A stretch of DNA of 63,071 bases, filler included, from Octopus bimaculoides (lineage: Eukaryota), in assembly GCF_001194135.2 (NCBI RefSeq). It is 4 parts of 4 records of this genome, joined end to end, with 100 filler letters (N's around TTAATTAATTAA, not from the genome) between each part and the next. Parts side by side here need not be neighbours in the genome. Positions count along the whole stretch, not along the records: positions 38,759 to 56,800 come from NC_068981.1; 3 more parts are not named here. One strand, written 5' to 3'. The notes beneath the pieces are model-generated. The model saw only the letters and a list, made by a program, of their open reading frames with translations, had not been told where the DNA came from and did not search any database. The position numbers were made by a program, and so were the translations under genes. Positions within the stretch are counted from its first letter, which is position 1; every line of letters starts with the position of its first letter. Below are positions 38,759 through 56,800 of the stretch, piece after piece.

Positions 38759-38812
<54 letters not shown>

Positions 38813-39741
38813 CCCACTTCACGTATATATATACGTGTGCACATTAAAATACAAGTTCTAGTTGTATTTCATTTCAATTTTATTATCAATTAATAATTAA
38901 TTTGTTTTGATTAATTCGTTTTGTCATAGATTGTGATATTATTGCTGACCTTATACATCACTACTATTATACATTCCTTGTCTTTTGTCCTTTGCAAGAA
39001 ACAAAGAATATCATATTCAACCAACAGTACATTCTTTATGACAATGAAAATGTCTTAAATTGGTAGTTTAATGCGCTAGAAATAGCTAGAAATTTCCAAT
39101 GAACCCATACTTTGTATTTGACAGAAACGAAAGGATGCATTTTTAAAAGCAGCCCTTGATATTTTTTGCATGAATGAAAGACGGAGTTGTCAATTTTGGA
39201 ACCGATTTTGATCAAATCTATGCCACAATATTAATTACTGTGTGATAATGAAAAATTACTAATATTCCTATTGTAGCAATCTTATTTCATTATATTTAGA
39301 TATGAAAATCCACTTTTTGACAAAAATAAATGAAACGATTTAAAGCTCAGAGAAACTTCTTTTGAATGTAACAATGGTGTTTGTTATACTTTTTTGCAGA
39401 TAAACATATTGTCGATTTAACATGTCATAACATTTGCTTGTTTTTTTTTTTTTTACTGCTGTTGTAGTTGTTGTTATCGTAATACCGACATATGTTCTGA
39501 TGCGATACCTAAATTTATTCTCAGCAAGATGAAGATGTCAACATTGATTCTGTTGCTGGCCTTCTTTCTCATCATGATGATGTTATTGCTGCTGACTCTG
39601 ATGATAGGAATTATAATGAAGGTTTTCTACATGGCTTCAGAATAATAACTCATATAGGTAACGAGCACCACCACTGTACACACGAGTTCTTTCAATCATA
39701 TATATTTATATGCATACATATAAACACACACACTGACATCC

Positions 39742-39839
<98 letters not shown>

Positions 39840-41049
39840 TAATCATATTCCTGTACAACAAAGTTGCTCAGTAATGCAAGCACGAGAAACACGTTTATAG
39901 CTAATACGCACATTTCAGATATGCAAACCATAATTCCTTGTCTCACGTATCACTTAAAACCTTTTCCTTCTGCCAAATATCCAAATAAATCAATCTTAGA
40001 AGCTTTACTAAATCCCTCATTCAAAAGACAATCACCGATTCTTCACAAAGAAAACAGAAAGCCGCATTCTAAATTAGTTTGAATTCATTACATTCACAGA
40101 TTTGGTAAATGCAATGCATAATATATTTGTTGCAGAGTCGGTTTCTGTCTAATTCACAAGAAAAATACAGAGAAGAATATGGAAGATTGACATAAAATAA
40201 TGATAATGGAAAGGAATTACATCCACTAAATTTTGATTTTCAGTTATTGTATGATACTTGAGAGAAGTGTGTGCAACAGAGACGTAGATACGAATACATC
40301 TGAATTGGTTACAAAGGACTCTGGAAAGGAATACATACCATCGTATGTAGTGTGATATGTTCCCATGTGAGCTGTATAAAATGGACGGATAAATTTATTT
40401 AGAGAAAGGTAGTTAGGTAGTTATAGGAGTAGTGGAAGATGGAGAAGCACTTATAAAATGTTATACGATCGACAATTGAATGTGGAGTGTTGTTTTTTTG
40501 CTGGTATATGGCACATATAGTGTGTCAGTTTGAGTGAGGAAGTATGTGATTATATGTGCGCAAGAAAGAGAGGAAGAAAAGAGTGGGGAGAGAAAATTGT
40601 TAGTTTATGTCAGTCAGTGACGGTGGTGCCGTGCTTATGACATTTGCTGCCACTCCTGTATCAGTGCAAAAGATGCAGTTGATGTTCAGTTTGACCGTTT
40701 ATGGCGCAATGTTTGCAGTAGTTGCATAAATAGGAGGGAAATTTCGAGAGGATTTCAATCTTGGGGAAAGAGAGAGAACTGGACAAAGTGCTTAAGGGCG
40801 GAGGCTGAAAAGTGAAATATAATTTGAATGAGTGATTCGGTTGTGTCTAAGTGAATACATGAAACTTGCTATTCTGGAAGAACAGAAGTCGCTGTTATTG
40901 AGGAATTAATGAAGGGAATTAATAGAGAATATCTGTTTGATATTACAAAGTATTAGTGTGTAAATTAACGACAATCAGTCGAATGATCCCCTTCTTTTAG
41001 CTGCAGTCTTGTATATAAGTAATTACCGTTTCGAGTTTTAGCACTCATT

Positions 41050-41427
41050 AGGGCCGGTTATCCAGTTTTCATAGCCTATAATAGACCAAAATAACAACGC
41101 TCCCTACCCTAAATGGAAGGACACATCACGTGATCGACTTTGCTATCGGATGTTGTTATACATCGCTGGTTACAATGCGCCTTGCATCGGTTTTTAGCTT
41201 TCGAATGACACCACCCCACTTGACTAGAGGAGCAGGCCAGCGTTACCCCACGATCAGAAGGCGAGTTCATCACAGGGTGTATCCATTTACAGCTGAGTGG
41301 ACTGGAGTAATTTGAAATGAAGTGTTTTGCTCAAGAGCACAACATGTCACCCAGTCTGGGAATCGAAACCACGGTCTTACTATCGTGTGTGCCATACGCT
41401 TAGCCACTAGGCCACGTGCCTTCACAT
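41050..41427 (-). mobile_element. family C head + diverged tail-2-like SINE
   Basis: Head and central block CAGCTGAGTGGACTGGAG...GTTTTGCTCAAGAGCACAAC...GGGAATCGAAACC...AGCCACTAGGCCACGTGCCTTCAC; 3' part GGGCCGGTTATCCAGTTTTCATAGC resembles tail-2 GGGCCCGGTTTCCCGGTTTCTATGGC. Confidence 0.7.
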
Positions 41428-41949
41428 ACATATTATATACGATGCGATATTTAGAGCTATTTCGTGGCCTTTTCCTCTTGATAGAAGATTAACTGCTCAG
41501 TCTCATTTCTGACAGACACTCTCCACTAATGCCCCATATTTATTTAGAGTATATGGCATGAGCGACCTATTGAATAATTTTACTTATTCGCGACCTCAGG
41601 TGACGATATAACGATATATCGCTGTATATTATTTTTGAAGATTATTTTCTTTCTACCGTTATTATGTTAATATATTTCTTTTACTGTTTAGATATAGTTG
41701 AAATCTATTGCTCTAAATCTTATTGTTCTATAATTGAAATGTATTGTTTTAATTCCTGATATCATTATTTGAGGGATAATAGTATCATGCAACATTTAAT
41801 ATTGCCTTTGCATTTGCCCTTGTTATTACATTTATGTTTTGAAAGAAAATAAATCAATTGGTGTATTTCACATTGATCATTTATGTTCTTGCATAAAGCG
41901 TCTGTAGACAAATTCTCGGTGACCAATACTTTCGTTTAATGCCTCGCCA

Positions 41950-43500
41950 CAAAATCTTTCTACTATTACACCGCTAACAAATATTTTATCACTATCTTCT
42001 ATGATACTGTATAATCTATATCTGAAAACCTGGGTATTATATAATTTAAATTCTTGTTCCTTTGTGGCGAACACTATTTATAATTGGTAAATTTATCAAT
42101 ACCTTTCGGCTATTTTGCCTTCTTTCTTAGTGCTTCTCCCTTCTGTGTGCTCATCTTCAGATACCTAATTATGGACATATTTATGCATGCATACTTTCAC
42201 GTTTCATTTGCCATCAATATATCTTCCAACTTATATCTTAAACTTTATTTTATCTTTCATCTGACACCGAATTGCTCTTCGTACCACTTGTCTGTAACTT
42301 TGAATCCACAAACGAAGTTAACTTTCCAATGCACTCTTTTGCCGATACAGTCGAACCTGCATCAATACTCTTTTTGTGTTAGTTTGCTGCATTCATTTAG
42401 GAGATGATTAATACTTTCGTCTCCTTTTCCACAGGTTCTGTGTTTGCTCTCAGTTTAAGTTTCATTAATCGTTCTCTTTATAAAATGTTTATAATGGTTT
42501 GTTCCTGAGCTGATATAATCAGCGGTTCAGTTTCTCGTTTCAGGTTTCTGTCCATCAACTACAACCAATGTTCTTTACTTCCAGCATCCTTGGTTTCTTG
42601 CCAGAATTATCCGTGTAATTTCTGTCTCTTTCCAGGTATTTGTCCCGTCGTACTCCTTTCCGTTCTTGAATTCTCGCACTGTTACGGTGACTTCTTTGAT
42701 ATTTCTAACCGCAGATAATATATTTCACTACGCACAGCATAGTTTTCCAAATTTAAAATCACAGTTCTTATAGAGTTTTCTGCATTTAACTAACCGCTAT
42801 CTCCTTCCTGAGTTTTTTAATGGAAACTCTCGATATCACTTTTAGGTTGTGAGTTTTGTATTATGAGTAATGTCCTACATCTTTTATCCAATTCCTTTAA
42901 CTCTGTTTTTGTTCACTTTAGTCAAGGAACAAACTATCTCAACACCAGAAGGACCCATGTACTGCTAACTTCGATGACATAATCTCTATTTTGTTGTATT
43001 TCGAGCACTGTACCTGCCCAACGCTTCTACTCTACTCTTTGGAGCATTTCTCCTTCCATTAACTTATCATCTTGCTGCTCACTAAGCTACTTATATTCTT
43101 CATCATCAGCAATCTAATATTAACACATTATAATATCTTTATGTTATCAGATTTAATCTTTCTATCTCTCTTCATAATTTAAACAGCGAACCTATTTACT
43201 CCTACACTGCAACAACAATATCCTTACTAAATATTCTTACTGCTTCAATAAGAGAATCCATATTGGTGCATTGTCTGAGAACATATATGTATAGCAGATG
43301 ATTGATTTTCTAGCTAGTCCAGAGGCAAGTCTTATTATATCAGTAAGCTTGTCGGAAGAATTAACACAATTGCGAAAAGCTATGGTAAAGCATCATCTCC
43401 CTATTTTCACACTTCCCAATGATTTTCTTCTGTATTTTAGTCCTATTTCCAGAGATTTCATTTCTTAAGAAAATACCCGTCAAGCTTCTCACCACGAGTG
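41950..43500 (-). mobile_element. old R4/Dong-clade LINE fragment (copy 3), RT through RLE
   Basis: Minus-strand translations: GDDALP*LFAIVLI, INHLLY, MDSLIEAVRIFSKDI, ELKELDKRCRTLL..PKSDIE, LKRETEPLIISAQEQ, RTCGKGDESINHLLNECSKLTQKEY..RFDCIGKRVHW. Many stops and frameshifts. Confidence 0.8.
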
Positions 43501-43850
43501 TCCTTAAGCCCTCAAAATCGAACAGTTGTGGTACATTATGTCACGCTTTCTTGTAACCTACCCCACAACCAGCGAATTTCTTTCTTATTCGTACCTCACT
43601 TCATATCCTACTTTCGATATACAACAGATTGGAAGTTCCTCTCGTTTTACTTCTGCACCCCTTTTGTCCATCTGTTAATGGTTTCTCCTACTCAATAAAA
43701 CTATGCAAGTCAACTGCTATCGAGCAGGTTGGTAATTTCCAGATCAATGGCAAGCAATAATAACTACCGACTTCCACTTACTTTTCTTTGTTCATTTGTA
43801 TTAACATTTTCTCCTTTGCCTTTATTATTATTATCATTATTATTATTATT

Positions 43851-43980
43851 GAGTGAGAGAGCAGTTAATGCCATCAAAGAGACACTGGGGTAAAATATAC
43901 GAAACCCAGTATACCCATCATGACTACCTGTCTGATAAGCGTACACAAGGCATATGCATCACAACCATATGTGCGCGACA
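43851..43980 (-). mobile_element. family E element, 5'-truncated (130 bp), at an (ATT)n tract
   Basis: Matches the end of the 47434-48044 element. Confidence 0.85.
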
Positions 43981-44022
43981 GAGTACAGTGTTATTAGGGA
44001 CAGCTAAGATACTATTATTATG

Positions 44023-44063
<41 letters not shown>

Positions 44064-44466
44064 TATTATTAGACGATACGCTCTTCGTATTGTCTATTTA
44101 CCGTTGTGAAGAGTTACGTTAATCCTTGAAAGTGTTATTATTATTGTTATTATTATTGTTATTGTTATTATTATTACTGCTGTTGTTATCATCCTCCTCC
44201 TCCTCCTTCTCCTCCTCCTCCTNNNNNNNNNNNNNNNNNNNNNNNNNNNNNNNNNNNNNNNNNNNNNNNNNNNNNNNNNNNNNNNNNNNNNNNNNNNNNN
44301 NNNNNNNNNNNNNNNNNNNNNNNNNNNNNNNNNNNNNNNNNNNNNNNNNNNNNNNNNNNNNNNNNNNNNNNNNNNNNNNNNNNNNNNNNNNNNNNNNNNN
44401 NNNNNNTCATTATTATTATTATTATTAATGTTATTATTATTATTATCATCATCATCATCATCATCA

Positions 44467-44525
<59 letters not shown>

Positions 44526-45159
44526 ATTATTATTATTATTTTGTTCCTAACTTTTATTAATTACGTTAATGGAGTAGATTGAATTTCTGTTCAATATCTA
44601 TTATTCTGACGGTAGACGAATTGAAATCTGAAATGTTCTCTGTTGCCAGCTTCAGAAGAAATATTTTCATGATACAGCATTCAGTTCTTTGAAACATCGA
44701 AATTCAGGAGCTCAGAAGCCCCAATATCTTCCAGAGAACATGGTTATGCAATGGTGATTGGCGTCAAACATCTCCTGAAAACTACTAATCACATGGATAA
44801 AAGGTCCTTTCATGTTATCCCTACTATCTTCAATATATACTACGAAGATCTAAAAGAAAGAATCTAAATAAAATACAATTAATTTTCCGAAATAACATTT
44901 AAATCAAATCTCCTATATTTTCATTGACTGCTGAGGGCGTGATCCGTGCACAGAAGGTGCCACAAGAAAACGATAATCGCATAAAGGTTTCGTTGTATGT
45001 ACATATTTTGGCGCTAGTCCACTTGTTTGTCGTCATGTGATTCGGATGATGAAACAGTATGTGATTGTTGGAAGGATAATAACGGAGTTAATAGCAAGGC
45101 AATTGTTTTCTTTTAAATGAAGCAGGTTTGCACACCACACATTATTGACGAAACTCAAT

Positions 45160-45560
45160 GGAGATCTCGACGTAGAAGATTATGAAGACGGGTAAAATAG
45201 TCTGTTGGATATGTTGGAGCTAATTATCCCAATAGTCAGACTAGCTACACTTCACAAAACGCTTCTAGTGTCATTCCGTGTGTTCAATGAGCCAGACTGT
45301 GGTTTCTGTGTACAATCCACCCGAGGTCCCTCTTCACTTGCTGAAGTAATTTTCAACCATAAACCCCACGTTTTGAGATATGTAAGCTCCCTGCACAGTG
45401 TTTAACAGATCTATGAAAGCCCAAAGTGTTGACTGCTGTTTTATGGAAACATTGAAAAGTAGCCACAGATGAAATCTGAGTGTTAGATGATGCACCAAGG
45501 TGGATGATGTCATAGCAACGTTTATTCTTGACAAACTACACAATCCATACAATACATACA
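45160..45560 (-). mobile_element. possible degenerate RTE LINE remnant
   Basis: Minus-strand translation has AFIDL and SNRLFY segments resembling RTE ORF2 motifs, but spaced far too closely. Confidence 0.3.
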
Positions 45561-45744
45561 CAAAATGATATCGTTTTTATATTACATATCTCTTGTTGAG
45601 AGTATGTGATAAATTTGTATCGTGAACTTTACGATGGAAAAATTAATTAAAATGTTCCATAATAAAATAACATGTTGCTATTTTATGTCTTGCTTATTTC
45701 TCGCCTTTTTTGATGTTTTATATGTGAAAAATTAATGATGCTCA

Positions 45745-45882
45745 GCATAATGGTTGGAGTGTTTGACTCATAATCATAAGCTCATTTCCTGTAAGTTCAA
45801 TTCCTGGATCGGGCGTTGCGTTTTGTCCTTAAACAAAGAGAATTTTATTTCTTGTTGCTCCGGTTTACTCAGCTGTAACAAG
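45745..45882 (+). mobile_element. family C SINE head and central block (old)
   Basis: CAGCATAATGGTTGGAG...AAGTTCAATTCCTGG...GTTTTGTCCTTAAACAAAG...GTTGCTCCGGTTTACTCAGCTGTAAC. Confidence 0.7.
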
Positions 45883-46069
45883 TTCCAACCGATAACAAGA
45901 GCAGCCCTCTCCTTTTTGTGGATATTCTGCTAGGCCCAAACTTCTTGACCCAAGAAGGTGTTTACATCTGTTCATGTATATACAGACGACTATACCAATT
46001 ATCGAGCGCAGGTACGTATTCTCGAGTCATACTCGTTCACTGGTGACCACTGGCTGGATGCATTAGATC

Positions 46070-46480
46070 TCTTTCTTTGTTTTTACTTCTTTCCGTCATT
46101 AGACTGCGGCCATGCTGGAGCATTGCGCTGAAGAGTTTTTAATCAAAGGAATCGACTCCAGTATATATTTTTAATCCGGTACTTATTCTATTAGTTATTT
46201 TTTTGCCGAACTGTTAAGTTACGGAAACGTAAACAAACCATCACCGGTAACAAGCGGTGGTGGGGGACAGACAGACAGACACACACACACGCGCGTACAC
46301 ACACACACACACACGCACACACACACGCATACACGCGCACACATATATATATTTAAGGCTTTGGTCTACCCCGAGGGAATAATATAAACACTTACTGAAG
46401 GTACCATGCAGTGGGACTGAACCCACAACCATGTGGTTGGGAAGCATGCTACTTACCACACAGCCACTCCAGCGCCTACA
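46070..46480 (-). mobile_element. family A SINE with internal (CA)n
   Basis: Reverse complement of the 749-1120 element, with head CTTACCACACAGCCAC at the right end. Confidence 0.88.
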
Positions 46481-47067
46481 GAAATATTTTCTTAGAATTT
46501 CTTGTCTCTACATAACAACATAACAGAGGGAACAGAACTGACTTTTAAACCTGCTAGAAATACCAGTCACATCACCTCGAATCACCGTTTTAAAAAGTTG
46601 ATGCATCTCAAGACGCGCGACATCTTAAGGATAGATAGGATAAACACTTTCGGAACATCTATAATCTTCGATCTAATCAATCACAATTGAACCAGACCAA
46701 GACAACCACAACAAGAAGAACAAGATCAACAATAACTAATAGGAGTTTCTAAACTGTTTTTATCAACAAAAAAAACCTACAAAAGAAAACAAAAAAATGT
46801 AGCAACAAAATATCCCCTTTTAGACGCCAGCGAAAGGTATATTTATTGAGATTGATGTCTTATTAGTCTCCTTACAGTTCTATAGAACTCTCGTTCTGTT
46901 TCGTTACATCTACCTCTCTCTCATTGTCTCACTTTCTTTCTTTTTTATCTCCTCCTTTCCTCCTCTCTCTCACTCTCCGCCTCCCTTCTTTGGCTGTGTG
47001 GGAATTCGATAAATCTTTGTCGAAACCTGACACTTTACTAAGAGGGACTGTTGTTGTTGTTTTTGCT

Positions 47068-47069
<2 letters not shown>

Positions 47070-47106
<37 letters not shown>

Positions 47107-47200
47107 CTTCTTCTTCTTCTTCTTCTTCTTCTTCTTCTTCTTCTTCTTCTTCTTCTTCTTCTTCTTCTTCTCCTCATCATCACCATCACCATCATTACTT
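47070..47200. repeat. (GTT)n(CTT)n compound microsatellite
   Basis: Direct read. Confidence 0.95.
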
Positions 47201-47201
47201 A

Positions 47202-47400
47202 CGCGGTAAGATGGCAGAATTGTTAACACGCGAAGGTTTTTCGCCTGTCTTTACGTTATGAGATCAAATTTCGTCGAGATCGACTTTACCTTTCGTCATT
47301 GGGAATCGATAAAATAAAGTACCAACCAAACACTGTGGTTGTTGTAAGCGAGTGACCCCACCCACTCAAAATTTCAGACCCTGGGCTTTTAGTAGAAAGG

Positions 47401-47433
<33 letters not shown>
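47202..47433 (+). mobile_element. family D SINE with (ATT)n tail
   Basis: GCGGTAAGATGGCAGAATTGTTAAC head through GTAGAAAGG(ATT)n. Confidence 0.85.
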
Positions 47434-48044
47434 GAGTGAGAGAGCAGTGCATGCCATCAGAGTGGCACTGGGGTANNNNNNNNNNATTGAGTGAGAGAGC
47501 AGTGCATGCCATCAGAGTGGCACTGGGGTAAAATATACGAAGCCCATTATACCCATCGTGACTACCCGTCTGATAAGAGTACCCTAGGCGCATGCATCAC
47601 AACCATATGTGCACGACATGGTGATCTCATATCAAGATAAACAGCACATGACCTCGCAGGTGGGGCCCACACAGAATTTTCTTCAGGTCGAGTAGCCCAT
47701 CCCGCTCAAAAGGTCCCTGAATAAGGTTTGTTTAAGGATGTTGAGCAAAACACCCATGTTTCTAAAGGTGAATTATTCAAACCCCAAAGAATTCCTCTCA
47801 ATACATGGCTATGATGCTCCCCGCCCACTTCTGCTCATGATCAGAGATGCACATATTGTCAGCCACTAAGGGACATGCTCAACTGGTTAAGGTCAAACAA
47901 CTGACAAGCAAAACAATGGTATTAAACAGAATATTTGCTGTAGCCCATCTTTTATACCAAGACAAAACAATGTACATGATTACACTTCCAATCAATTAAG
48001 ATCAGAAGCCATGAGAGCCATTGCCTGGTACTGCATCCGGGCAT
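47434..48044 (-). mobile_element. family E non-coding element (about 555 bp after removing an assembly duplication), inserted in (TAA)n
   Basis: No ORF, no A/B boxes and no TIRs. Minus-strand 3' end CTCTCTCACTC(AAT)n is shared with truncated copies at 43851 and 60596. Confidence 0.8.
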
Positions 48045-48689
48045 TTATTAGTATTATTTCAATTATTATTTGTAGTAGTAATAGTGGTACTATTGAATAT
48101 AAAATGAGCTAAATTGATTTTGTGTAATAGAGTTCCTTATTGGTGTTTTCTCTACAGTTGTATGTGCTGTTTAACCCCAGGTCAGCCCTGATCGAACAGA
48201 CATGAATAAAAGAATTCCAGTCATGACATAAAGCAACTCCATAAGAAAGTTATTAACACAATAGTGTCTAATAAAGTGATTTCATTGGAAATTGATTCAG
48301 AATAGTTATAACGTCCAGTACTGTATACTAAATTTTACGATACAGTTTATTTCTCCAAATATACTGGGTTCAGTATTCTTTCATCAAATAGCCATCTAGT
48401 ATGGTTTTACGTAAAGTGAAATTATAATCGATAAATGTCATAAGAAATATGGTTGGTTTTTCTCAAATTCTTGAATAACATTCGAAATCAATAATTGTGA
48501 ACTAACGATGACAGTAAAATATAGAGGTAAAATGAAAGCGGACAGCTATTTATAGCAGAGTTACAGGGCTTAACAAAAGGGTATAAATAAACACGAGTAT
48601 ATTTTAAGAGTTGTAAACAAAATATCTCAGGAAAACAATTGTATTTGATATATATAAGAATGAAAGGATATATTTACTCTGTTTTTTAC

Positions 48690-48910
48690 TCTCTTTTGCT
48701 TGTTTCAGTCATTTGACTTTGGCCATGCTGGAGCACCGCCTTTAGTCGAGCAAATCGACCCCAGGACTTATTCTTTGTAAGCCTAGTACTAATTATTCTA
48801 TCGGTCTCTTTTGCCGAACCGCTAAGTTACGGGGACGTAAACACACCACAATCGGTTGTAAAGTGATGTTTGGGGAGAAAAACACAGACACACAAACACA
48901 CACACACACA
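48690..48910 (-). mobile_element. family A SINE 3' module
   Basis: Nearly identical to the reverse complement of 925-1120. Confidence 0.9.
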
Positions 48911-49033
48911 CACCCACATGTATATATTCACATATATATGTGTGTGTGTATGTATGTATGTATTTGTGTATGTGTGTGTATATAAACACATATATATATA
49001 AATATATAAACATATATGTATGTATATACACGC

Positions 49034-49095
<62 letters not shown>

Positions 49096-49390
49096 GAGGT
49101 GCAATGGTTAGGGCAGCGGATTCGCGGTCGGAGGATCGCGGTTTCGATTCCCAGACCGGGCGTTGTGAGTGTTTATTGAGCGAAAACACCTAAAGCTCCA
49201 CGAGGCTCCGGCAGGGGGTGGTGGCGACCCCCGTTGTACCCTTTTGCCCCAACTTTCTCTCACTGTTTCTTCCTGTTTCATGAGTAACGCTGCGATGGAC
49301 TGGCGTCCTGTCAAGCTGGGGGAACACATACACCATAGAAACCGGGAAACCGGGCCTTTTTAAGCTTTAAAAGGGCGCATAATAATAATG
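49096..49390 (+). mobile_element. family B head + tail-2 SINE
   Basis: Collinear with the reverse complement of 36189-36506; ends GGGCGCATAATAATAATG. Confidence 0.9.
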
Positions 49391-49421
<31 letters not shown>

Positions 49422-50349
49422 CACACGCACACGTCTTCCCTTGCAACTTGCAGTCTTCTCTAGTCTGTTAACATCTTATCAGAAGTCAATACGCTGATGT
49501 CGACAATGTAAATCGTATTTAAAAACATCATGTTAAAAACAACAAAAATATAATCCAATTAATAATTAAAAATTGAAGTACAATCGATGGAATTAACTTT
49601 TTGTCTCCATTTTATTCAATGAACAATATTCCAGATTTGGAAGTTTAGATGAAATGCATTCGTTTGAGAAACAAGTAAGTCGAATAGGCTTAGATTCAAT
49701 CGAAAATTTGGCTGAGAAGGAAAACATTGACTAGATATGCAACGTTTGTTTAGTAGTGTATTAGGTACAAGATAAATTCTAAATTGAGTGATGAAGCAGT
49801 CGCTTTCTTTAAAAGCGGATATGAAAATAAGTTTCCTAATTTTTGAATGTTTTAATGTTGATAGTTACAAGAATCTTTGAATTAAGCGTAAAAGAGAGTG
49901 ATATTTTAGAAGAGAATTAAGAATGATTAAATTTCGGTGTAAACATTCCAATGCCCTTTCAAAATACAGTGTCTGTGGAAATGAAATTAAAAAAACGAAA
50001 TGTAACCAATTTTTCGAATATCTGATAATTTCTAAGATCTTGAGTCTTGGCAAAATTCTAGTTCCCGCCTATTGAAAGTATATAAGTACTTTGCTCTATG
50101 CGGTGAGCTTCAGTTCTCTTGTTTGTGAAAAACCAAATACACATACACACAAGTATACACAAAGGAGCAAAATGAATAATCTTTTTCTAGATAAAGTTCA
50201 CAACTATCGTAGAATTGTAGGATATAAGCTGACACATAACGAACCAACAGCTGAAGCTAAGGTGAATCTCTAAATCTGCGGTGAGCGTAATCACTTTTCT
50301 TGCTTGAATATACTGGAAACCCGAGTAAACGATAAATTAATATTTCTTA

Positions 50350-50391
<42 letters not shown>

Positions 50392-50637
50392 CTTTTTATC
50401 CGTAGCACATGAAGAAAAAAAAAGACATATTTGAATCTTCTTTAAGCTGCACGAAGTTTTATGTAGTCTACATCTAAAAGTAAGGTTTCCTAAATTACAT
50501 CAATCTATATGTTTAGCTAATTCTCCACAAAAATATATGTATTGATTAGACTGAATTTATTTGTTTGCGATTATTTTACATCATTGTTAATGCTTCGAAA
50601 ATATCGAAACTATTTTTTATTGATATGAACTTAACAT

Positions 50638-50852
50638 AAGGCGGTGAGCTGACAGAATCGTTACCATGCCGGGTAAAATGCTTAACGGCATTTCGTCCGT
50701 TTTAGCTTTCTTAGTTCAAATTCCACAGAGGTCGACTTTGCTTTTCATCTTTTCGGGGTCGATAAAATAAGTACCAGTTGAGCTCCGTGGTCGACGTAAT
50801 CGAGTTACCCCTCCACTGAAACTGCTGGTCATGTGCCAAAATTGAAGCCAAC
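50638..50852 (+). mobile_element. family D SINE, full length
   Basis: AAGGCGGTGAGCTGACAGAATCGTTACC...GAGGTCGACTTTGCTTTTCATCTTTTCGGGGTCGATAAAATAAGTACCAG...GTGCCAAAATTGAAGCC. Confidence 0.9.
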
Positions 50853-50914
50853 GTGAACTAATTTCTGTTTCTAACAGGCAAAAGAAGTGAAATATCGGTG
50901 GATAAAGTATACAA

Positions 50915-51052
50915 CAGGTACTTTATTTTTAAAGTTTCCTGCGAGAAGAAATGCAAAGTCGACCTCCGCGGGATTTGAAATTAGAACGTAAAGACCGAGA
51001 ACAAAGATATTTTTTTCTAGGCTCAATCGATTCTACTAATCCTCCGCTGCTA
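50915..51052 (-). mobile_element. family D SINE, degenerate
   Basis: GGTACTTTATTTT...AAATGCAAAGTCGACCTCCGCGGGATTTGAAATTAGAACGTAAAGAC. Confidence 0.75.
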
Positions 51053-51254
51053 ATCTATGAACTACTAATACAAACAATGTATAATCATAATTATTTGTTA
51101 GGTAAATTATTAAGGATTACGATGAGTTAAGATCTTGGCTATTGTTTTGAATTTATGCAGGTATATTATGAAAAGAGCTTTTCTTTAAAAGATCGTTTCT
51201 AAAACCATTCATGGGAGCTTCAATATTTTTCATACAATGTGCCGGCAACAAAGT

Positions 51255-51450
51255 AAATGATAAATTGCCGCAAGACAGCAATAACACTGTGTATTCTGAA
51301 TTGACAACAGGAAAATGTCATCATGTAAGACCAAAAGTGAAGTTGTAAGACGTCTTGAAGCGAAACCCCTCGCCCTGAACTAAAGAAGTTCAATAATGAC
51401 ATCATGGATGGAAAATCATTCAAAGGATTTTTCACATTTTGGCTACGAAT
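51255..51450 (+). mobile_element. RTE-clade LINE 3' ORF2 remnant
   Basis: Translation VYSELTTGKCHHVRPKVKL*DVLKRN matches the RTE C-terminal LYxELxxGKRxxGRPKxRxKDxLKR pattern. Confidence 0.6.
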
Positions 51451-51789
51451 TCTTTGAGCAACACGGAAAAGTTAAAGAGCCGCAGAATCGTCCAGCAAAA
51501 CAGATGAGACATGTTACCATCACAAAAGACTCAAGAACTATATCATGCAGGGAATCTTATTGAATATTTCAGTTAATCATGGGTCTCAACAGTCACCTGT
51601 GTGTCTAAGTATGTATAAATATACACACTTAAACATATATAGTCATATATGTATGCATCCACACGCACACATATACATACGCATAGATGTATGTACATAC
51701 ATGCGTGCATATACGTATGTATACATACAAATGCATAGATACACACACATATATACATACATATATATATGTATATATATATATTATAT

Positions 51790-51834
<45 letters not shown>

Positions 51835-52518
51835 GCATTTAGGTAAATGAAACGAGAATGAGTGGCCGCTGGATCGTACTTGAACAACAAATATAAAAAA
51901 AGGAGTATAGTCTATAACATACAAGATCAATTCTTGATTTATTCAAATTNNNNNNNNNNNNNNNNNNNNNNNNNNNNNNNNNNNNNNNNNNNNNNNNNNN
52001 NNNNNNNNNNNNNNNNNNNNNNNNNNNNNNNNNNNNNNNNNNNNNNNNNNNNNNNNNNNNNNNNNNNNNNNNNNNNNNNNNNNNNNNNNNNNNNNNNNNN
52101 NNNNNNNNNNNNNNNNNNNNNNNNNNNNNNNNNNNNNNNNNNNNNNNNNNNNNNNNNNNNNNNNNNNNNNNNNNNNNNNNNNNNNNNNNNNNNNNNNNNN
52201 NNNNNNNNNNNNNNNNNNNNNNNNNNNNNNNNNNNNNNNNNNNNNNNNNNNNNNNNNNNNNNNNNNNNNNNNNNNNNNNNNNNNNNNNNNNNNNNNNNNN
52301 NNNNNNNNNNNNNNNNNNNNNNNNNNNNNNNNNNNNNNNNNNNNNNNNNNNNNNNNNNNNNNNNNNNNNNNNNNNNNNNNNNNNNNNNNNNNNNNNNNNN
52401 NNNNNNNNNNNNNNNNNNNNNNNNNNNNNNNNNNNNNNNNNNNNNNNNNNNNNNNNNNNNNNNNNNNNNNNNNNNNNNNNNNNNNNNNNNNNNNNNNNNN
52501 NNNNNNNNNNNNNNNNNN

Positions 52519-52557
<39 letters not shown>

Positions 52558-53585
52558 TACACAACACACACATATATGCATACATATGCGTTTGTATATA
52601 TTTGTACATATATGTATATTTTTATGTAGGTATATGTATATGCATTTATATATATATATATACACATACATGTACATAAATGCATATGTAAATATACAAA
52701 TATACGCGTGCGTGCGTGTGCGTACATATGTGTGTTTGTGCGTGTATGTAAGTACAACGTGCATTAGAGCAAATTTGCTAATTTATTCTTTATTGATGTA
52801 ACACAGCTCAATGTGTGCAGATTGTTTTCTGTTCTGTTTGTTTGGTCGTGTCTAGTGAGTATCGCTTATATTGAAATCGGAACAAGACGACGAGCATCCC
52901 TGACTGGAATAGATGAAGAAGAGACGATAATGGTGGAATCAATGGTATACGAGGTGAGGATATTAGTGGAGATCTATGACGACATTAGCTGCAATCAATA
53001 CTTACTTCCTCATTCTCCCTTTTACTATTTCACTGACGCAATGCCAAATCTAATGTCAATTTAGATCTCGCCGTGGAGCTTACATTGTCTATTATTATTG
53101 ATTATATTGATCTACAATTATGGGTGACATCACTGTTGTGTAGCAAACGCAGAGAAACAACTCTTCTTCTTTTTATTACACTGTGTATTGATTCCTGAAA
53201 CCGGCCTATCCTGTCTTTATATCAGCATCATGAATGGATTGTGTGAAGACTAAAGACAGTGTTTGTTATATATGACAATATATAATAACTTGAAATAGTT
53301 TTCTTACAGTCGGTCAAGTAAGTACGTGCCTAAGTACATAACATCTTTGATCCTACATAAACCTATAACTTTGATTTGGTAGAAGAAAAAAACAAACAAA
53401 CCAAAAGCCTCTCAACAAATGTCGGATTATACTTTATGGGAGTTATAAAAAAAATGTTTTCGCCTCAACAAACTTTCTGAGTGCTAACAAGTCAACAGGA
53501 TTAAGGATTAAAGTGGCTTCATTTGGTGACTTTTCAAGTTACTTTTGATGATAATAGTACTAAAAAACGTTTATATAAATATTGA

Positions 53586-53662
53586 TTCTTCTTCTTCTTC
53601 TTCTTCTTCTTCTTCTTCTTCTTCTTCTTCTTCTTCTTCTTCTTCTTCTTCTTCTTCTTCTT

Positions 53663-53691
<29 letters not shown>
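53586..53691. repeat. (CTT)n, about 35 units
   Basis: Direct read. Confidence 0.97.
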
Positions 53692-53694
<3 letters not shown>

Positions 53695-53830
53695 GTTCTG
53701 AGTTCAAATTCTGCCGAGGTCAGCTTTGCCTGTCATCCTTTCGGGGGTCGATAAATCAAGTACCAGCGAAATGCTGGGGTCGACTAGTATCCTCCCCAAA
53801 ATTTGAGGCCTTGTACCCTCGGTAGAAAGG

Positions 53831-53883
<53 letters not shown>
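53691..53883 (+). mobile_element. family D SINE 3' two-thirds with (ATT)n tail
   Basis: TTACGTTCTGAGTTCAAATTCTGCCGAGG...CATCCTTTCGGGGGTCGATAAATCAAGTACCAG...GTAGAAAGG(ATT)n. Confidence 0.88.
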
Positions 53884-54249
53884 GAAAACTTTTCCTTGAT
53901 ATCTGCTGTGTTTACGCATTATCCACCGGACGCCACCCAGACACCTGATGGAGAAAAAAAACGCATATGATGTTTTTTTTAATACAATGGATGATTATAG
54001 GATTGAACAAAGTTTTTAAAGTAGCGCGTGTACATATAGGTGACAAATAAAAATGCTATAAAACTATTAAATACAAAATGATAGTGCTTTTCGTTGAATG
54101 TACAGAGTTTCTATAAGGTTTATTTTCCGTATTTCTTTTAAACATGGTTTTCCTAGTCTATGAATAAGGAAAATAAAACACAATAAAGAAAACACAAAAA
54201 TTAAAGTATTTAAAAAAATCAAAAATATCAAGTAGATTATTGCTGAACG

Positions 54250-54870
54250 ATAACAGTTTTGCGCAAAGTAGCCGCCATCAGCTTCCACCATGGCGTCGAA
54301 TCGTCTCTGAAACGCGGTTCATGCGTTTCTCGTTGCCTCCTGGGCTCTGAGAAGATCCTCGAACACCTCTTCGATCTTGGCCATCAGCTCAGCTTAGAAT
54401 TGCAGGTAGAGTGGTTTGGATCTGTCTCAACCGCACTCAATGCAGAGAAATGTATGGTATTGCTATCGGGGGAATTAGGAAACCAGAAAATGGGGCTGGT
54501 GAAATCGTAAGATTTCTCCGACAATCACTTCTGACTGCTTTTGGAGGCATGGCAAGGCGGCGAATTCTGCTGCTGCACATATGGCCTATTTGTAGCGACC
54601 CTCTGCAGCTAGTTTTTGACCACAATCTCCAGCAGCTTCACATAGCTGTCTGAATTGATTGAGTCAGAAGCCCTGTTCAGAGATGCGGTGATGAACTCCG
54701 CCATAGGGAGGCAATCAGAATATCTACGGCGTTTCTTCTTGATCACAGTTTCATAATCTCCGTTGTACCAGTCCGTGCCATATCTACAGTGTTCACAGAA
54801 TATTGAGTAGAAGTCACGATATGAGCATTTTGATACCCCGCGCGAATCATCTCGATGAAGTTATCTCATT
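54250..54870 (-). mobile_element. Tc1/mariner DD37D (maT) transposase pseudogene, internally deleted
   Basis: Minus strand: IEMIRAG (HTH), then NSDSYVKLL..RPYVQQQNSPPCH..SQK*LSE..DFTSP.FWFPNSPDSNTIH..MVEADGGYF. There are 37 residues between the (mutated) second and third catalytic positions; the first-D region is missing. TIRs not confidently found. Confidence 0.85.
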
Positions 54871-55946
54871 TCCAATATTCAGATGACTTTCAGTCCTGCA
54901 TGTTAGCTAATGTTTGCTCAAATGCAACTGTAATCTTTATGCTTTCAAATATCGTTGACTGTTTACCAATATATTAAGTTATCTCTCAAATCAGGTGACA
55001 TTAAAATCGTAAATTTTCATCTCGACTATTCTGTAAAAATGTGTGTGTGAATTTATGTGTGTGTGTGTGTGTGTTTGTGTGTGAGTTTGCGTGTGTGCGT
55101 GTGTGCGTGTGTGTGTGTGAATCATTACTTTTTACATCCGCGTCTTTGTAGATGCATGCAACCAAGTGACTGCATCTGTTCCTTTAAAGAACCTCAGATG
55201 GAGAATCTTTGGGATGTCTTACACATTTTTATTGTGCCGGTAATAAATTGGGTTTGGAGAATGGGTTCCGGTTCGTTTGCAATTTTTTTTTTTTAATCCT
55301 GCAAATATGTGTGTATGCATGTATGCATGTATGCATGTATGCTTGTGTGTGTCTATATTTATGTGTGCATATTTATGTGTGTGCATATATTTATGTAAGT
55401 ATGTATTTATGTGTCTCTATGTATGTATGAAGGCGTTGACATATGAAGAGTACTTAACGATTGATGTATAGAAAACACCATTGTATTTGATACATTGAAT
55501 CGCTAACATGATTTAGGAGTATTGAAATGTAAAACACGAGAATTAATTTGTAGAAATTGAGTGTAAAACCATAAAAATAACGACTGTAATAAAATATTAA
55601 AGACAACTTGCTGTAGAAGATATCAAAATTTATATGTTTTGCAGTTTTCATGTTTAATGGAGATGTTGCCGTTATTGAGTAGAATAAAATCAACATATAC
55701 AACATTCTCTGTAATATTATCCTCAGAGATATTTGCAAAAAATTTATTGAAATATTTGCGATTCGAAAACAGAATAATATTTTCAGTGGCAATCATTAAA
55801 TTCTAATTATCAAACTTAAAATGAAAAATAAATACGTATTCATTTAATCGAACATTATATAAGAAAATTCGATACAAAATGCTTCTTTTCTGACGTATGT
55901 TTTATAGGGAAAATATAATTAGTTTCGTTGCTATCAAAAGCGTATA

Positions 55947-56021
55947 TTTTTTATATTTTCATTTTATATTTCAGGTGAGTTCGCATTTTGTTTGCATATG
56001 AAGAATGTAGAAGTCGTAAGT
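55947..56021 (+). promoter_or_regulatory. candidate recursive splice site with 41-nt RS-exon
   Basis: TTTTTTATATTTTCATTTTATATTTCAG|GTGAGT (AG at 55973-55974), and a second donor GTAAGT at 56016. Confidence 0.45.
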
Positions 56022-56321
56022 AAATCTTAGTATTTCCTGTTGTAAAGCATTAAATGTATGTTCTCACTTGGCAACCAATACTACCAGATTCGATGCAATA
56101 TATTCGCAATCCACAATAATTTCTACTGCAAGCAAAGTAAATGTCAAGATTACGAGAAAAGCTCAAAGCCATAAAGTTACTGATATTCAAAGAGGATTAA
56201 TATTTCTTATATGTCATTTATCAATGTATTCAAAGGTTAAAACTTAAAGTAAGATATCTTATTTCTGTGAAATAATACGATCCAAAATGCTATATCGGAA
56301 GACGTAAATTTATACAGATCT

Positions 56322-56357
<36 letters not shown>

Positions 56358-56712
56358 GAGTGTGCGCACACATATATATTAAGAAGTAGAGCGCAGCTGA
56401 ACGATTTGACAAGCTACATATGCATAGACAAACATATGCACGCATGCGCATATGCGTCTCTCTGCTCACTCTCTCCACAGTCTGTACGCATATGATAGTA
56501 GCAAGTATTTTGTAAATATAACGAGAGTATTTGTTCATATAATGTTTTAGCAAAGGCCTCAATGAAAAGGAAGAACGCTCGTGTAATAAAATATAAAATG
56601 GCTTTAAAAATAACGCATGAAGAACATGCTTATAAATATAAATACATAAATCTATTCATATATATTAGTCTTGCTATGACTAAGAGAAATATTAAAAAAT
56701 ATATGCACACAA

Positions 56713-56800
<88 letters not shown>

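What the first reader, a model, noticed from the sequence alone, without database searches (positions are those of the whole stretch)
47434..48044. Non-coding ~550-bp retro-element (family E) that targets (TAA)n like the resident R4/Dong LINEs
Seen: three copies (about 555, 130 and 24 bp; at 47434, 43851 and 60596) share the same end and differ only by truncation at the other end. All abut trinucleotide runs reading (TAA)n on the element's sense strand. There is no ORF, pol III box or TIR. A 3' stem-loop (TGCCA-CTCTGA-TGGCA) and a 7-bp hairpin at the far end are present. R4 copies 1 and 4 end in (TAA)n with the same polarity. Known: nested 5' truncation indicates target-primed reverse transcription, and Dong-type RLE elements target TAA repeats. 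Inference: E is a non-autonomous, non-tRNA partner of a microsatellite-specific RLE retrotransposon. Its 3' end does not match the two R4 3'UTRs in this window, so the partner is unidentified. I could not fold an HDV-like ribozyme at its 5' end by eye.
Basis: partly seen in the sequence, partly recalled or inferred. Interest (0 to 1): 0.7.

Follow-up and report, generated by a model that had tools for sequence, protein, structure and literature searches.

The report
Retroposon fragments ending in TAA repeats
This is a small family of copy-and-paste DNA fragments in an octopus-type genome that all end in a TAA repeat; the three copies I could examine make homing into TAA repeats with help from a Dong/R4 element plausible but do not show it.

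Summary
The repeat is real. The piece holds two copies: 47489-48044 and 43851-43980, 88.5% identical over 130 nt. I recovered a third, 144-nt copy from a public sequencing-run assembly. All three share one end, and that end abuts (ATT)n on the + strand, which is ...CTCTCTCACTC(AAT)n on the element's sense (minus) strand. This pattern fits 5'-truncated non-LTR retroposon copies made by target-primed reverse transcription.

The assembly gap at 47476-47485 is an unmerged 45-nt contig overlap. The apparent doubling of the 3' end is therefore an artefact, and the long copy is 556 nt.

Nothing beyond the first 144 nt is supported by a second copy. The "~550-bp element" could equally be a 144-nt unit plus flank, or a piece of a longer LINE.

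No ORF, protein domain, pol III box, tRNA or small-RNA head, ribozyme or terminal inverted repeat was found. The 3' stem-loop is neither conserved nor statistically unusual.

Evidence for (TAA)n targeting is suggestive only. The long copy sits tail-to-tail in the (ATT)n tail of an older SINE-like repeat, and the short copy lies between ATT arrays. The external copy has no array on its 5' side.

No Dong/R4 partner could be tested. Microsatellite tails are normal for the other retroposons in this piece. Verdict: an ordinary new family member of modest interest.

The parts
47489..47632 (-). E, 3'-terminal 144 nt. This is the only part shared by more than one copy. The sense strand ends ...CTCTCTCACTC.
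   Evidence: 88.5% identical to 43851-43980. 76% identical to L001:21-164.
47633..48044 (-). Upstream 412 nt of the 'long copy'. Whether it belongs to E is unverified, because no second copy covers it.
   Evidence: No other match in the piece. L001 diverges at position 144. Stops in all frames and no Pfam hit. No Rfam hit.
47434..47488 (.). Assembly artefact: a duplicate of the first 42 nt of E, then 10 N (47476-47485), then ATT.
   Evidence: The last 45 nt left of the gap equal the first 45 nt right of it.
47401..47433 (.). Perfect (ATT)11. It is at once the 3' tail of the + strand S1 repeat and the (AAT)n at the 3' end of minus-strand E. As a + strand 3'-OH it is the presumed primer for E cDNA synthesis.
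   Evidence: A second S1 copy ends with the same GTAGAAAGG(ATT)17 without E.
47200..47400 (+). S1, an older SINE-like repeat. E abuts its tail, tail to tail.
   Evidence: Alignment of three S1 copies. S1 copies are 63-73% identical to each other, against 88.5% for the E copies.
48045..48094 (.). Degenerate ATT-like stretch on the presumed 5' side of the long copy.
Evidence: 80% identity to (ATT)n over the first 30 nt; only 2% of 30-nt windows in the piece reach 70%.
43851..43980 (-). E short copy, the 3'-terminal 130 nt.
   Evidence: There are 15 differences from the long copy, 5 of them at CpG sites.
43822..43850 (.). (TTA)n abutting the 3' end of the short copy.
43981..44012 (.). 32-nt spacer at the 5' junction of the short copy. 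It is unrelated to E.
   Evidence: Its best local alignment to E scores 15-17, against 16.3 +/- 2.0 for shuffled spacers.
44013..44071 (.). (TAT)n array of about 20 units on the 5' side of the short copy.

Best explanation
E is a dispersed, non-coding non-LTR retroposon family whose sense strand is the minus strand of the window. Its RNA ends ...CUCUCUCACUC(AAU)n.

New copies are made by target-primed reverse transcription. A nicked DNA strand ending in (ATT)n pairs with the (AAU)n end of the RNA and is extended into GAGTGAGAGAG.... Reverse transcription often stops early, which gives copies that share the 3' end and differ in length (556, 144 and 130 nt).

In the copy of this finding, the primer strand was most likely the (ATT)n tail of an older SINE-like repeat (S1). 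E therefore sits tail-to-tail inside that tail. E encodes nothing and must use the enzymes of an autonomous LINE that could not be identified here. A Dong/R4-type element is one candidate among several.

Shown: the repeat family, its shared end, its (TAA)n terminus, the truncation series, the absence of coding or small-RNA features, and the shared array with S1.

Inferred: the priming mechanism, the order of insertion, and a preference for TAA/TTA arrays (about even odds).

Unknown: the true full length and the partner.
For: - Three copies with unrelated flanks share one end and differ at the other.
- In all three that end abuts (ATT)n in one phase.
- No ORF, domain, tRNA, pol III box, ribozyme or terminal inverted repeat.
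- S1 ends GTAGAAAGG(ATT)n in two copies, so the array at 47401-47433 is also S1's own tail.
- S1 copies are more diverged from each other (63-73% identity) than the E copies are (88.5%), which suggests E arrived later.
- The short copy lies between ATT arrays. Only 4% of positions in the piece have an ATT-like array starting within 40 nt.
- Two other retroposon families in the piece also carry microsatellite tails.
- Dong elements target (TAA)n, including in a mollusc (PMC3812793). Dong-R4 is abundant and recently active in Octopus vulgaris (PMC13282606).
Against: - Only three copies could be examined.
- The external copy has no ATT array on its 5' side.
- The long copy's 5' boundary is defined by the ATT-like stretch itself. 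Such a stretch within about 600 nt is not rare in this piece (roughly 0.5 arrays per kb).
- No target-site duplication can be read, because the flanks are repeats.
- The order of insertion of S1 and E rests on divergence between a few copies.
- The opposite order (S1 primed on E's tail) is mechanistically just as possible.
- No partner LINE was seen, so dependence on any particular clade is untested.
Confidence: 0.6

Rival explanations
1. One reading: E is a discrete non-autonomous element of about 550 bp. It is not derived from a tRNA. It is mobilised by a (TAA)n-specific restriction-like-endonuclease LINE of the Dong/R4 type, and it inserts specifically into (TAA)n.
For: - (TAA)n lies on the sense strand at the 3' junction in 3 of 3 copies.
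- ATT-type arrays lie on both sides of the two window copies.
- The 3' array of the long copy existed before, or independently of, E as the S1 tail.
- Variable 5' junctions with extra nucleotides, such as the 32-nt spacer, are typical of R2-type insertions (PMC3414825).
- Dong targets (TAA)n in Bombyx, Anopheles and the snail Biomphalaria.
- Dong-R4 has 1,129 recent insertions in O. vulgaris.
Against: - No copy other than the long one extends past 144 nt.
- L001 has no 5' array.
- No Dong/R4 sequence was found in the piece, so there is nothing to compare the 3' end with.
- There is no 5' ribozyme of the kind that non-autonomous derivatives of R2 carry.
- A (TAA)n tail alone does not imply Dong. 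For example, the Drosophila I factor ends in (TAA)n (my own knowledge, not tested here).
Confidence: 0.2
2. Tail only, with no homing. E copies are ordinary 5'-truncated copies of a LINE 3' region or a SINE-like element. The RNA carries its own (UAA)n tail and inserts more or less at random. The ATT arrays near the 5' sides and the S1 tail are there because this region is rich in ATT arrays.
For: - Other retroposon families in the piece each carry their own microsatellite tail: S1 has (ATT)n and S2 has (AC)n.
- LINE 3' ends that consist of a microsatellite are known for octopus RTE (PMC9115989) and for lepidopteran RTEs, which generate microsatellite-flank families (PMC2887409).
- L001 has no 5' array.
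- The short copy lies in a 0.7-kb zone packed with ATT arrays.
Against: - The 3' junction of the long copy falls exactly where S1's own (ATT)n tail must be. That is unlikely for a random site, because ATT arrays cover about 2% of the piece.
- The short copy has arrays on both sides.
- Unlike RTE-type 3' fragments, E shows no reverse-transcriptase coding remnant upstream of the tail.
Confidence: 0.25
3. A rival about anatomy that can combine with any mechanism above: the true unit is only about 144 nt. Positions 47633-48044 are then unrelated flanking DNA, and the ATT-like stretch at 48045 has nothing to do with E.
For: - The long copy and L001 match up to exactly position 144 and then diverge.
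- The short copy stops at 130.
- Nothing in the piece or in the databases matches positions 145-556.
Against: - No ATT array or other junction signature lies at 47633.
- Random truncation at 130 and 144 nt is equally compatible with a longer element.
Confidence: 0.35
4. E is not a mobile element. It is a microsatellite-flanking sequence spread by segmental duplication, unequal crossing-over or gene conversion between ATT arrays.
For: All copies sit next to ATT arrays. Two lie within 3.6 kb of each other on the same strand.
Against: - Homology starts exactly at the array and ends at different points, with unrelated flanks on both sides.
- A 76-79% identical copy exists at an unrelated locus in another data set.
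Confidence: 0.05

Closest known systems
Dong, an R4-clade non-LTR retrotransposon with a restriction-like endonuclease that is specific for (TAA)n
   Same: TAA repeats lie on the sense strand at the 3' junction. Copies are 5'-truncated. ATT/TAA arrays lie on both sides of the two window copies. Dong-type elements occur in molluscs and are abundant in octopus.
   Different: E has no ORF. No homology to any Dong/R4 3' end could be tested. One of three copies lacks the 5' array. Membership or dependence is therefore not shown.
R2 SIDEs (short internally deleted elements), non-autonomous derivatives of a site-specific RLE LINE (PMC3414825)
   Same: The concept is the same: a short non-coding element that keeps the 3' end recognised by the LINE protein and is copied by target-primed reverse transcription, with variable 5' junctions.
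   Different: SIDEs carry the parent's 5' HDV-like ribozyme and a demonstrable parental 3'UTR, and they sit in rDNA. E has no detectable ribozyme, its parent is unknown, and its setting is microsatellite.
Microsatellite-associated families made by 3' partial RTE copies (Lepidoptera, PMC2887409), and octopus RTE-2_OV with a microsatellite 3'UTR (PMC9115989)
   Same: Frequent retrotransposition of 3' partial copies ending in a simple repeat creates families of shared sequence next to microsatellites.
   Different: RTE 3'UTRs are extremely short, so partial copies carry the C-terminal reverse-transcriptase coding region. E shows no coding remnant over 144-556 nt.
Microsatellite-tailed SINE-like repeats in the same piece: S1 with (ATT)n and S2 with (AC)n. 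(S3, a tRNA-derived SINE also present, is cited only for its pol III boxes.)
   Same: Dispersed repeats with a common 3' end followed by a simple repeat. S1 also shows 5' truncation.
   Different: S3 has clear pol III A and B boxes; E has none. E's tail is the complement of S1's tail on the respective sense strands.
Drosophila I factor and other LINEs whose own 3' end is (TAA)n (from my own knowledge, not tested here)
   Same: A (TAA)n terminus that is part of the element rather than a sign of target choice.
   Different: These are coding elements of another clade. No sequence comparison was possible.

Membership tests
Non-LTR retroposon copies made by target-primed reverse transcription | Common 3' end with variable 5' truncation among dispersed copies | tested here: met
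   Copies of 556, 144 and 130 nt share one end and have unrelated flanks.
Non-LTR retroposon copies made by target-primed reverse transcription | Simple-repeat or poly(A) tail at the 3' end | tested here: met
   (AAT)n on the sense strand in 3 of 3 copies, in the same phase.
Non-LTR retroposon copies made by target-primed reverse transcription | Target-site duplication flanking the insert | tested here: inconclusive
   The flanks are themselves ATT repeats. In L001 the contig ends inside the array.
SINE in the strict sense (pol III-transcribed, with a small-RNA-derived head) | tRNA-, 5S-, 7SL- or snRNA-derived 5' head with an internal promoter | tested here: not met
   ARAGORN finds nothing. 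No A or B box lies within 47489-48044. No Rfam family at E <= 10.
SINE in the strict sense (pol III-transcribed, with a small-RNA-derived head) | 3' region shared with a partner LINE | not testable with these tools
   No octopus LINE library was available. No LINE remnant lies in the parts of the piece scanned against Pfam.
Dong/R4-dependent (TAA)n-specific element | (TAA)n in the same orientation on both sides of the insert | tested here: inconclusive
   Short copy: yes, after a 32-nt spacer. Long copy: yes, but the boundary was defined by the array. L001: no.
Dong/R4-dependent (TAA)n-specific element | 3' end homologous to the 3'UTR of a Dong/R4 LINE of the same genome | not testable with these tools
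   No Dong/R4 sequence was found in the piece. The public collections searched hold no cephalopod genome.
SIDE-type non-autonomous derivative of an RLE LINE | 5' self-cleaving HDV-like ribozyme joined to the parental 3' end | tested here: not met
   No ribozyme family matched in the piece-wide or the E-only Rfam scans.
RTE-type 3' partial copy with a microsatellite tail | C-terminal reverse-transcriptase coding sequence directly upstream of a very short 3'UTR | tested here: not met
   Stops in all three sense frames. No Pfam family at E <= 10.
DNA transposon, MITE or Helitron | Terminal inverted repeats, or a 5'-TC...CTRR-3' terminus with a 3' hairpin | tested here: not met
   No terminal inverted repeat. 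The ends read ATGCCCGG... and ...CTCACTC.

The most novel reading that the evidence does not exclude
E is a ribozyme-less, pol III-independent hitchhiker of the octopus Dong/R4 LINEs. It homes into (TAA)n/(TTA)n arrays, and those arrays are supplied in bulk by the (ATT)n tails of abundant SINE-like repeats such as S1. That would make a three-tier chain in which one retroposon's tail is the landing pad for a site-specific LINE and for that LINE's non-autonomous parasite.
Probability: 0.15. Interest if true: 0.55.

Novelty: new member of a known kind. Interest (0 to 1): 0.28.

Why it matters
If E really depends on a (TAA)n-specific Dong/R4 element, it would be a rare example of a non-autonomous parasite of a microsatellite-targeting RLE retrotransposon. 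The tail-to-tail nesting in a SINE tail would then show how SINE tails create landing sites that let such elements multiply safely in octopus genomes, where Dong-R4 and SINEs are both very abundant.

As the evidence stands, it is one more unclassified microsatellite-tailed retroposon family. Its main practical value is for repeat annotation, and as a warning that sequences flanking ATT microsatellites in this genome are multi-copy.

Tried and rejected
1. Translated E reading frames as bait in the large protein collections, to fish out other E copies.
- Three word-index searches gave nothing, or only P0001.
- The full HMMER scan gave one true hit, P0001, and two chance hits to repetitive proteins.
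- P0001 led to L001. Its cluster mate P0004 led only to the same locus in sister runs, L002 and L003.
- Exact look-ups of window ORFs found nothing.

2. DNA pattern scans.
- Metagenome contigs, two scans: 0 hits.
- Viral contigs: 18 hits; my re-alignment (which read only the loci held in L004.fa) showed no extension beyond 19 nt in L004/L005, the rest taken as chance.
- Prokaryotic genome contigs: 1 chance hit.

3. Internal-deletion idea: that the 32-nt spacer of the short copy is the 5' end of E. Rejected, because its alignment score is no better than that of shuffled spacers.

4. Conserved 3' stem-loop or 5' hairpin. Rejected as evidence: the z-scores are not significant and there is no covariation.

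5. HDV-like ribozyme, hammerhead ribozyme or a small-RNA head. None found.

6. LINE remnant near E. No Pfam domain in stop-free segments of 40 aa or more at 43.4-48.7 kb and 54.2-55.0 kb. The rest of the piece was not scanned this way.

7. Literal search for E sequence strings in the paper library. None found.

8. Helitron or terminal-inverted-repeat transposon. The termini do not fit.

Full report
**The observation**

On the + strand, the finding's region reads as a perfect (ATT)11 at 47401-47433, followed by GAGTGAGAGAGCAGTGCATGCCATCAGAGTGGCACTGGGGTA, then ten N, then ATT and the same sequence again, which continues to about 48044.

The last 45 bases left of the gap are identical to the first 45 bases right of it. 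The simplest reading is that two contigs overlapping by 45 nt were scaffolded without being merged. Positions 47434-47488 are therefore an artefactual duplicate.

A second copy at 43851-43980 is 88.5-89% identical over 130-133 nt. It begins in the same way, directly after (TTA)n at 43822-43850. Sensitive blastn and nhmmer found no further fragment in the piece.

**An external copy**

Public DNA collections that I could scan hold no cephalopod sequence. Two metagenome scans gave no hits. The viral and prokaryotic scans gave only chance matches of 19-24 nt.

I then used a translated antisense reading frame of the E 3' end as bait. This found one real relative among 1.84 billion representative proteins (P0001, 53% identity). 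It is a spurious 79-aa ORF called on a 1-kb Logan contig from run SRR11869391 (L001).

That contig starts inside a (TTA)n run. It then matches E positions 1-144 at 76% identity to the long copy and 79% to the short copy, and then continues into unrelated sequence that is not rich in ATT. It holds no ORF longer than 84 aa and none was tested for LINE similarity. Sister runs carry the same locus.

There are therefore three verifiable copies of 556, 144 and 130 nt. All share the end that abuts (ATT)n, in the same phase (ATT|GARTGAGAG).

**What the element lacks**

- The longest ORF in E is 54 aa, and all sense frames are full of stops.
- No Pfam family matches any sense frame even at E <= 10.
- ARAGORN finds no tRNA.
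- No A-box or B-box match falls inside E, although such boxes are found in a tRNA-derived SINE elsewhere in the piece.
- Rfam finds nothing in E at E <= 10: no HDV-like or hammerhead ribozyme and no small-RNA head.
- There are no terminal inverted repeats.
Fold energies are not unusual (z from -1.86 to +0.57). The three-copy consensus fold has an unfavourable covariation term and a single compensatory pair. I do not count the stem-loop or the 5' hairpin as evidence.

**Orientation and mechanism**

A shared end next to a simple repeat, with a ragged other end, is the signature of target-primed reverse transcription. This makes the minus strand the sense strand, with an RNA ending ...CUCUCUCACUC(AAU)n. 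The first cDNA strand is then the + strand: a DNA 3'-OH ending in (ATT)n is extended into GAGTGAGAG....

This fits one detail of the locus. Directly upstream of the long copy lies a + strand SINE-like repeat, S1 (47200-47400). A second S1 copy at 53693-53830 ends with the same GTAGAAAGG followed by (ATT)17, with no E after it. The array at 47401-47433 is therefore S1's own tail as well as E's terminus, so the two elements are joined tail to tail. At least one of them must have integrated at the other's pre-existing array.

S1 copies are 63-73% identical to one another, whereas the two E copies are 88.5% identical. The more likely order is therefore that E was primed on the older S1 tail. The reverse order is mechanistically possible.

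**Target or tail?**

A (TAA)n at the 3' end cannot show this by itself. Two other retroposon families in this piece end in microsatellites of their own: S1 in (ATT)n and S2 in (AC)n. Microsatellite 3' ends are also known for octopus RTE and for lepidopteran RTE fragments. The test is the 5' side.

- Short copy: homology ends at 43980. A 32-nt spacer follows that is unrelated to E, and then a (TAT)n array of about 20 units. Only 4% of positions in the piece have an ATT-like array starting within 40 nt. However, this copy lies in a 0.7-kb zone packed with ATT arrays.
- Long copy: an ATT-like stretch (80% identity to (ATT)n) starts at 48045. That stretch is how the boundary was chosen, so the argument is circular. 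With roughly 0.5 arrays per kb, finding one within 600 nt is not rare.
- External copy: no 5' array.

Together with the S1 tail, this makes a preference for TAA/TTA arrays plausible, at roughly even odds. Such a preference could arise merely from pairing of the (UAA)n RNA end with nicked (TTA)n DNA, without a sequence-specific endonuclease.

**Length and identity**

No second copy covers positions 145-556. The long copy and L001 agree up to position 144 and then diverge. Three readings remain open:
- a 556-nt non-autonomous unit;
- a unit of about 144 nt followed by unrelated flank;
- a truncated piece of a longer LINE 3'UTR.

No reverse-transcriptase or endonuclease remnant was found in the regions scanned against Pfam (43.4-48.7 kb and 54.2-55.0 kb), and none of the ORFs of 60 aa or more across the whole piece looks like a LINE protein on reading. 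No partner could therefore be examined.

The literature makes Dong/R4 a reasonable candidate. Dong elements target (TAA)n in Bombyx, Anopheles and the snail Biomphalaria (PMC3812793). RLE clades are mostly target-specific (PMC4640811). Dong-R4 accounts for 1,129 recent insertions in O. vulgaris, which also has 893 unclassified SINE families (PMC13282606). Non-autonomous derivatives of RLE LINEs are known (R2 SIDEs, PMC3414825), but those carry a 5' ribozyme that E lacks.

**Verdict**

The repeat family, its polarity, its (TAA)n terminus and its lack of coding or pol III features are real. The doubled 3' end is an assembly artefact. The 550-bp unit length, the conserved stem-loop, strict (TAA)n targeting and the Dong/R4 partnership are not established.

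This is best filed as a new member of a known kind: a microsatellite-tailed, 5'-truncated non-LTR retroposon with an unidentified partner. Interest is modest. It would rise if a genome-wide census showed 5'-flank enrichment for (TAA)n and a shared 3' end with an octopus Dong/R4 element.

Noticed in passing
47105-47433 and 53586-53883: Two copies of the SINE-like repeat S1 are 5'-truncated at different points. Each is directly preceded by a long perfect (TTC)n (22 and 35 units) and followed by (ATT)n. A third S1 copy at about 50640-50850 has neither. The recurrent (TTC)n at the 5' junction is unexplained.
   Followed up: partly
46081-46343 and 48694-48918: A second SINE-like family (S2) lies on the + strand. 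It contains ...GTCATTTGACTGCGGCCATGCTGGAGCA... and ends in a (GACA)n(AC)n tail. The two copies are 80% identical.
   Followed up: partly
41100-41414 (minus strand) and 49100-49370 (plus strand): A tRNA-derived SINE family (S3) has a perfect A box (TGGCCTAGTGG) and a B box (GGTTTCGATTCC). ARAGORN does not call it a tRNA.
   Followed up: partly
38759-56800: All 13 trinucleotide arrays of five or more units are T-rich on the + strand (ATT/TTA/TAT x8, TTC x2, TTG, TCA, TCC). None is in the opposite orientation. This is a marked strand asymmetry over 18 kb.
   Followed up: no
44072-44134: A 63-nt non-repetitive island sits between two ATT-type arrays, in the same setting and polarity as the short E copy. 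It may be another heavily truncated insert with a (TAA)n tail.
   Followed up: no
48880-49100, 51600-51780, 52520-52750, 55310-55390: Many Rfam 'microRNA' matches (mir-297, mir-3149, mir-1277, mir-466) fall here. All are far below their gathering scores and lie in (TA)n/(TG)n/(AC)n low-complexity DNA. They are spurious.
   Followed up: yes
44223-44406 and 51950-52518: Two further assembly gaps (184 and 569 N). Both sit inside or next to simple-repeat arrays, so the array lengths there are unknown.
   Followed up: no
L001:1-164 (also L002, L003): An E-like copy (76-79% identity) occurs in Logan assemblies of runs SRR11869390, SRR11869391 and SRR11869394, whose organism I could not determine. 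All three contigs break inside the (TTA)n array.
   Followed up: partly
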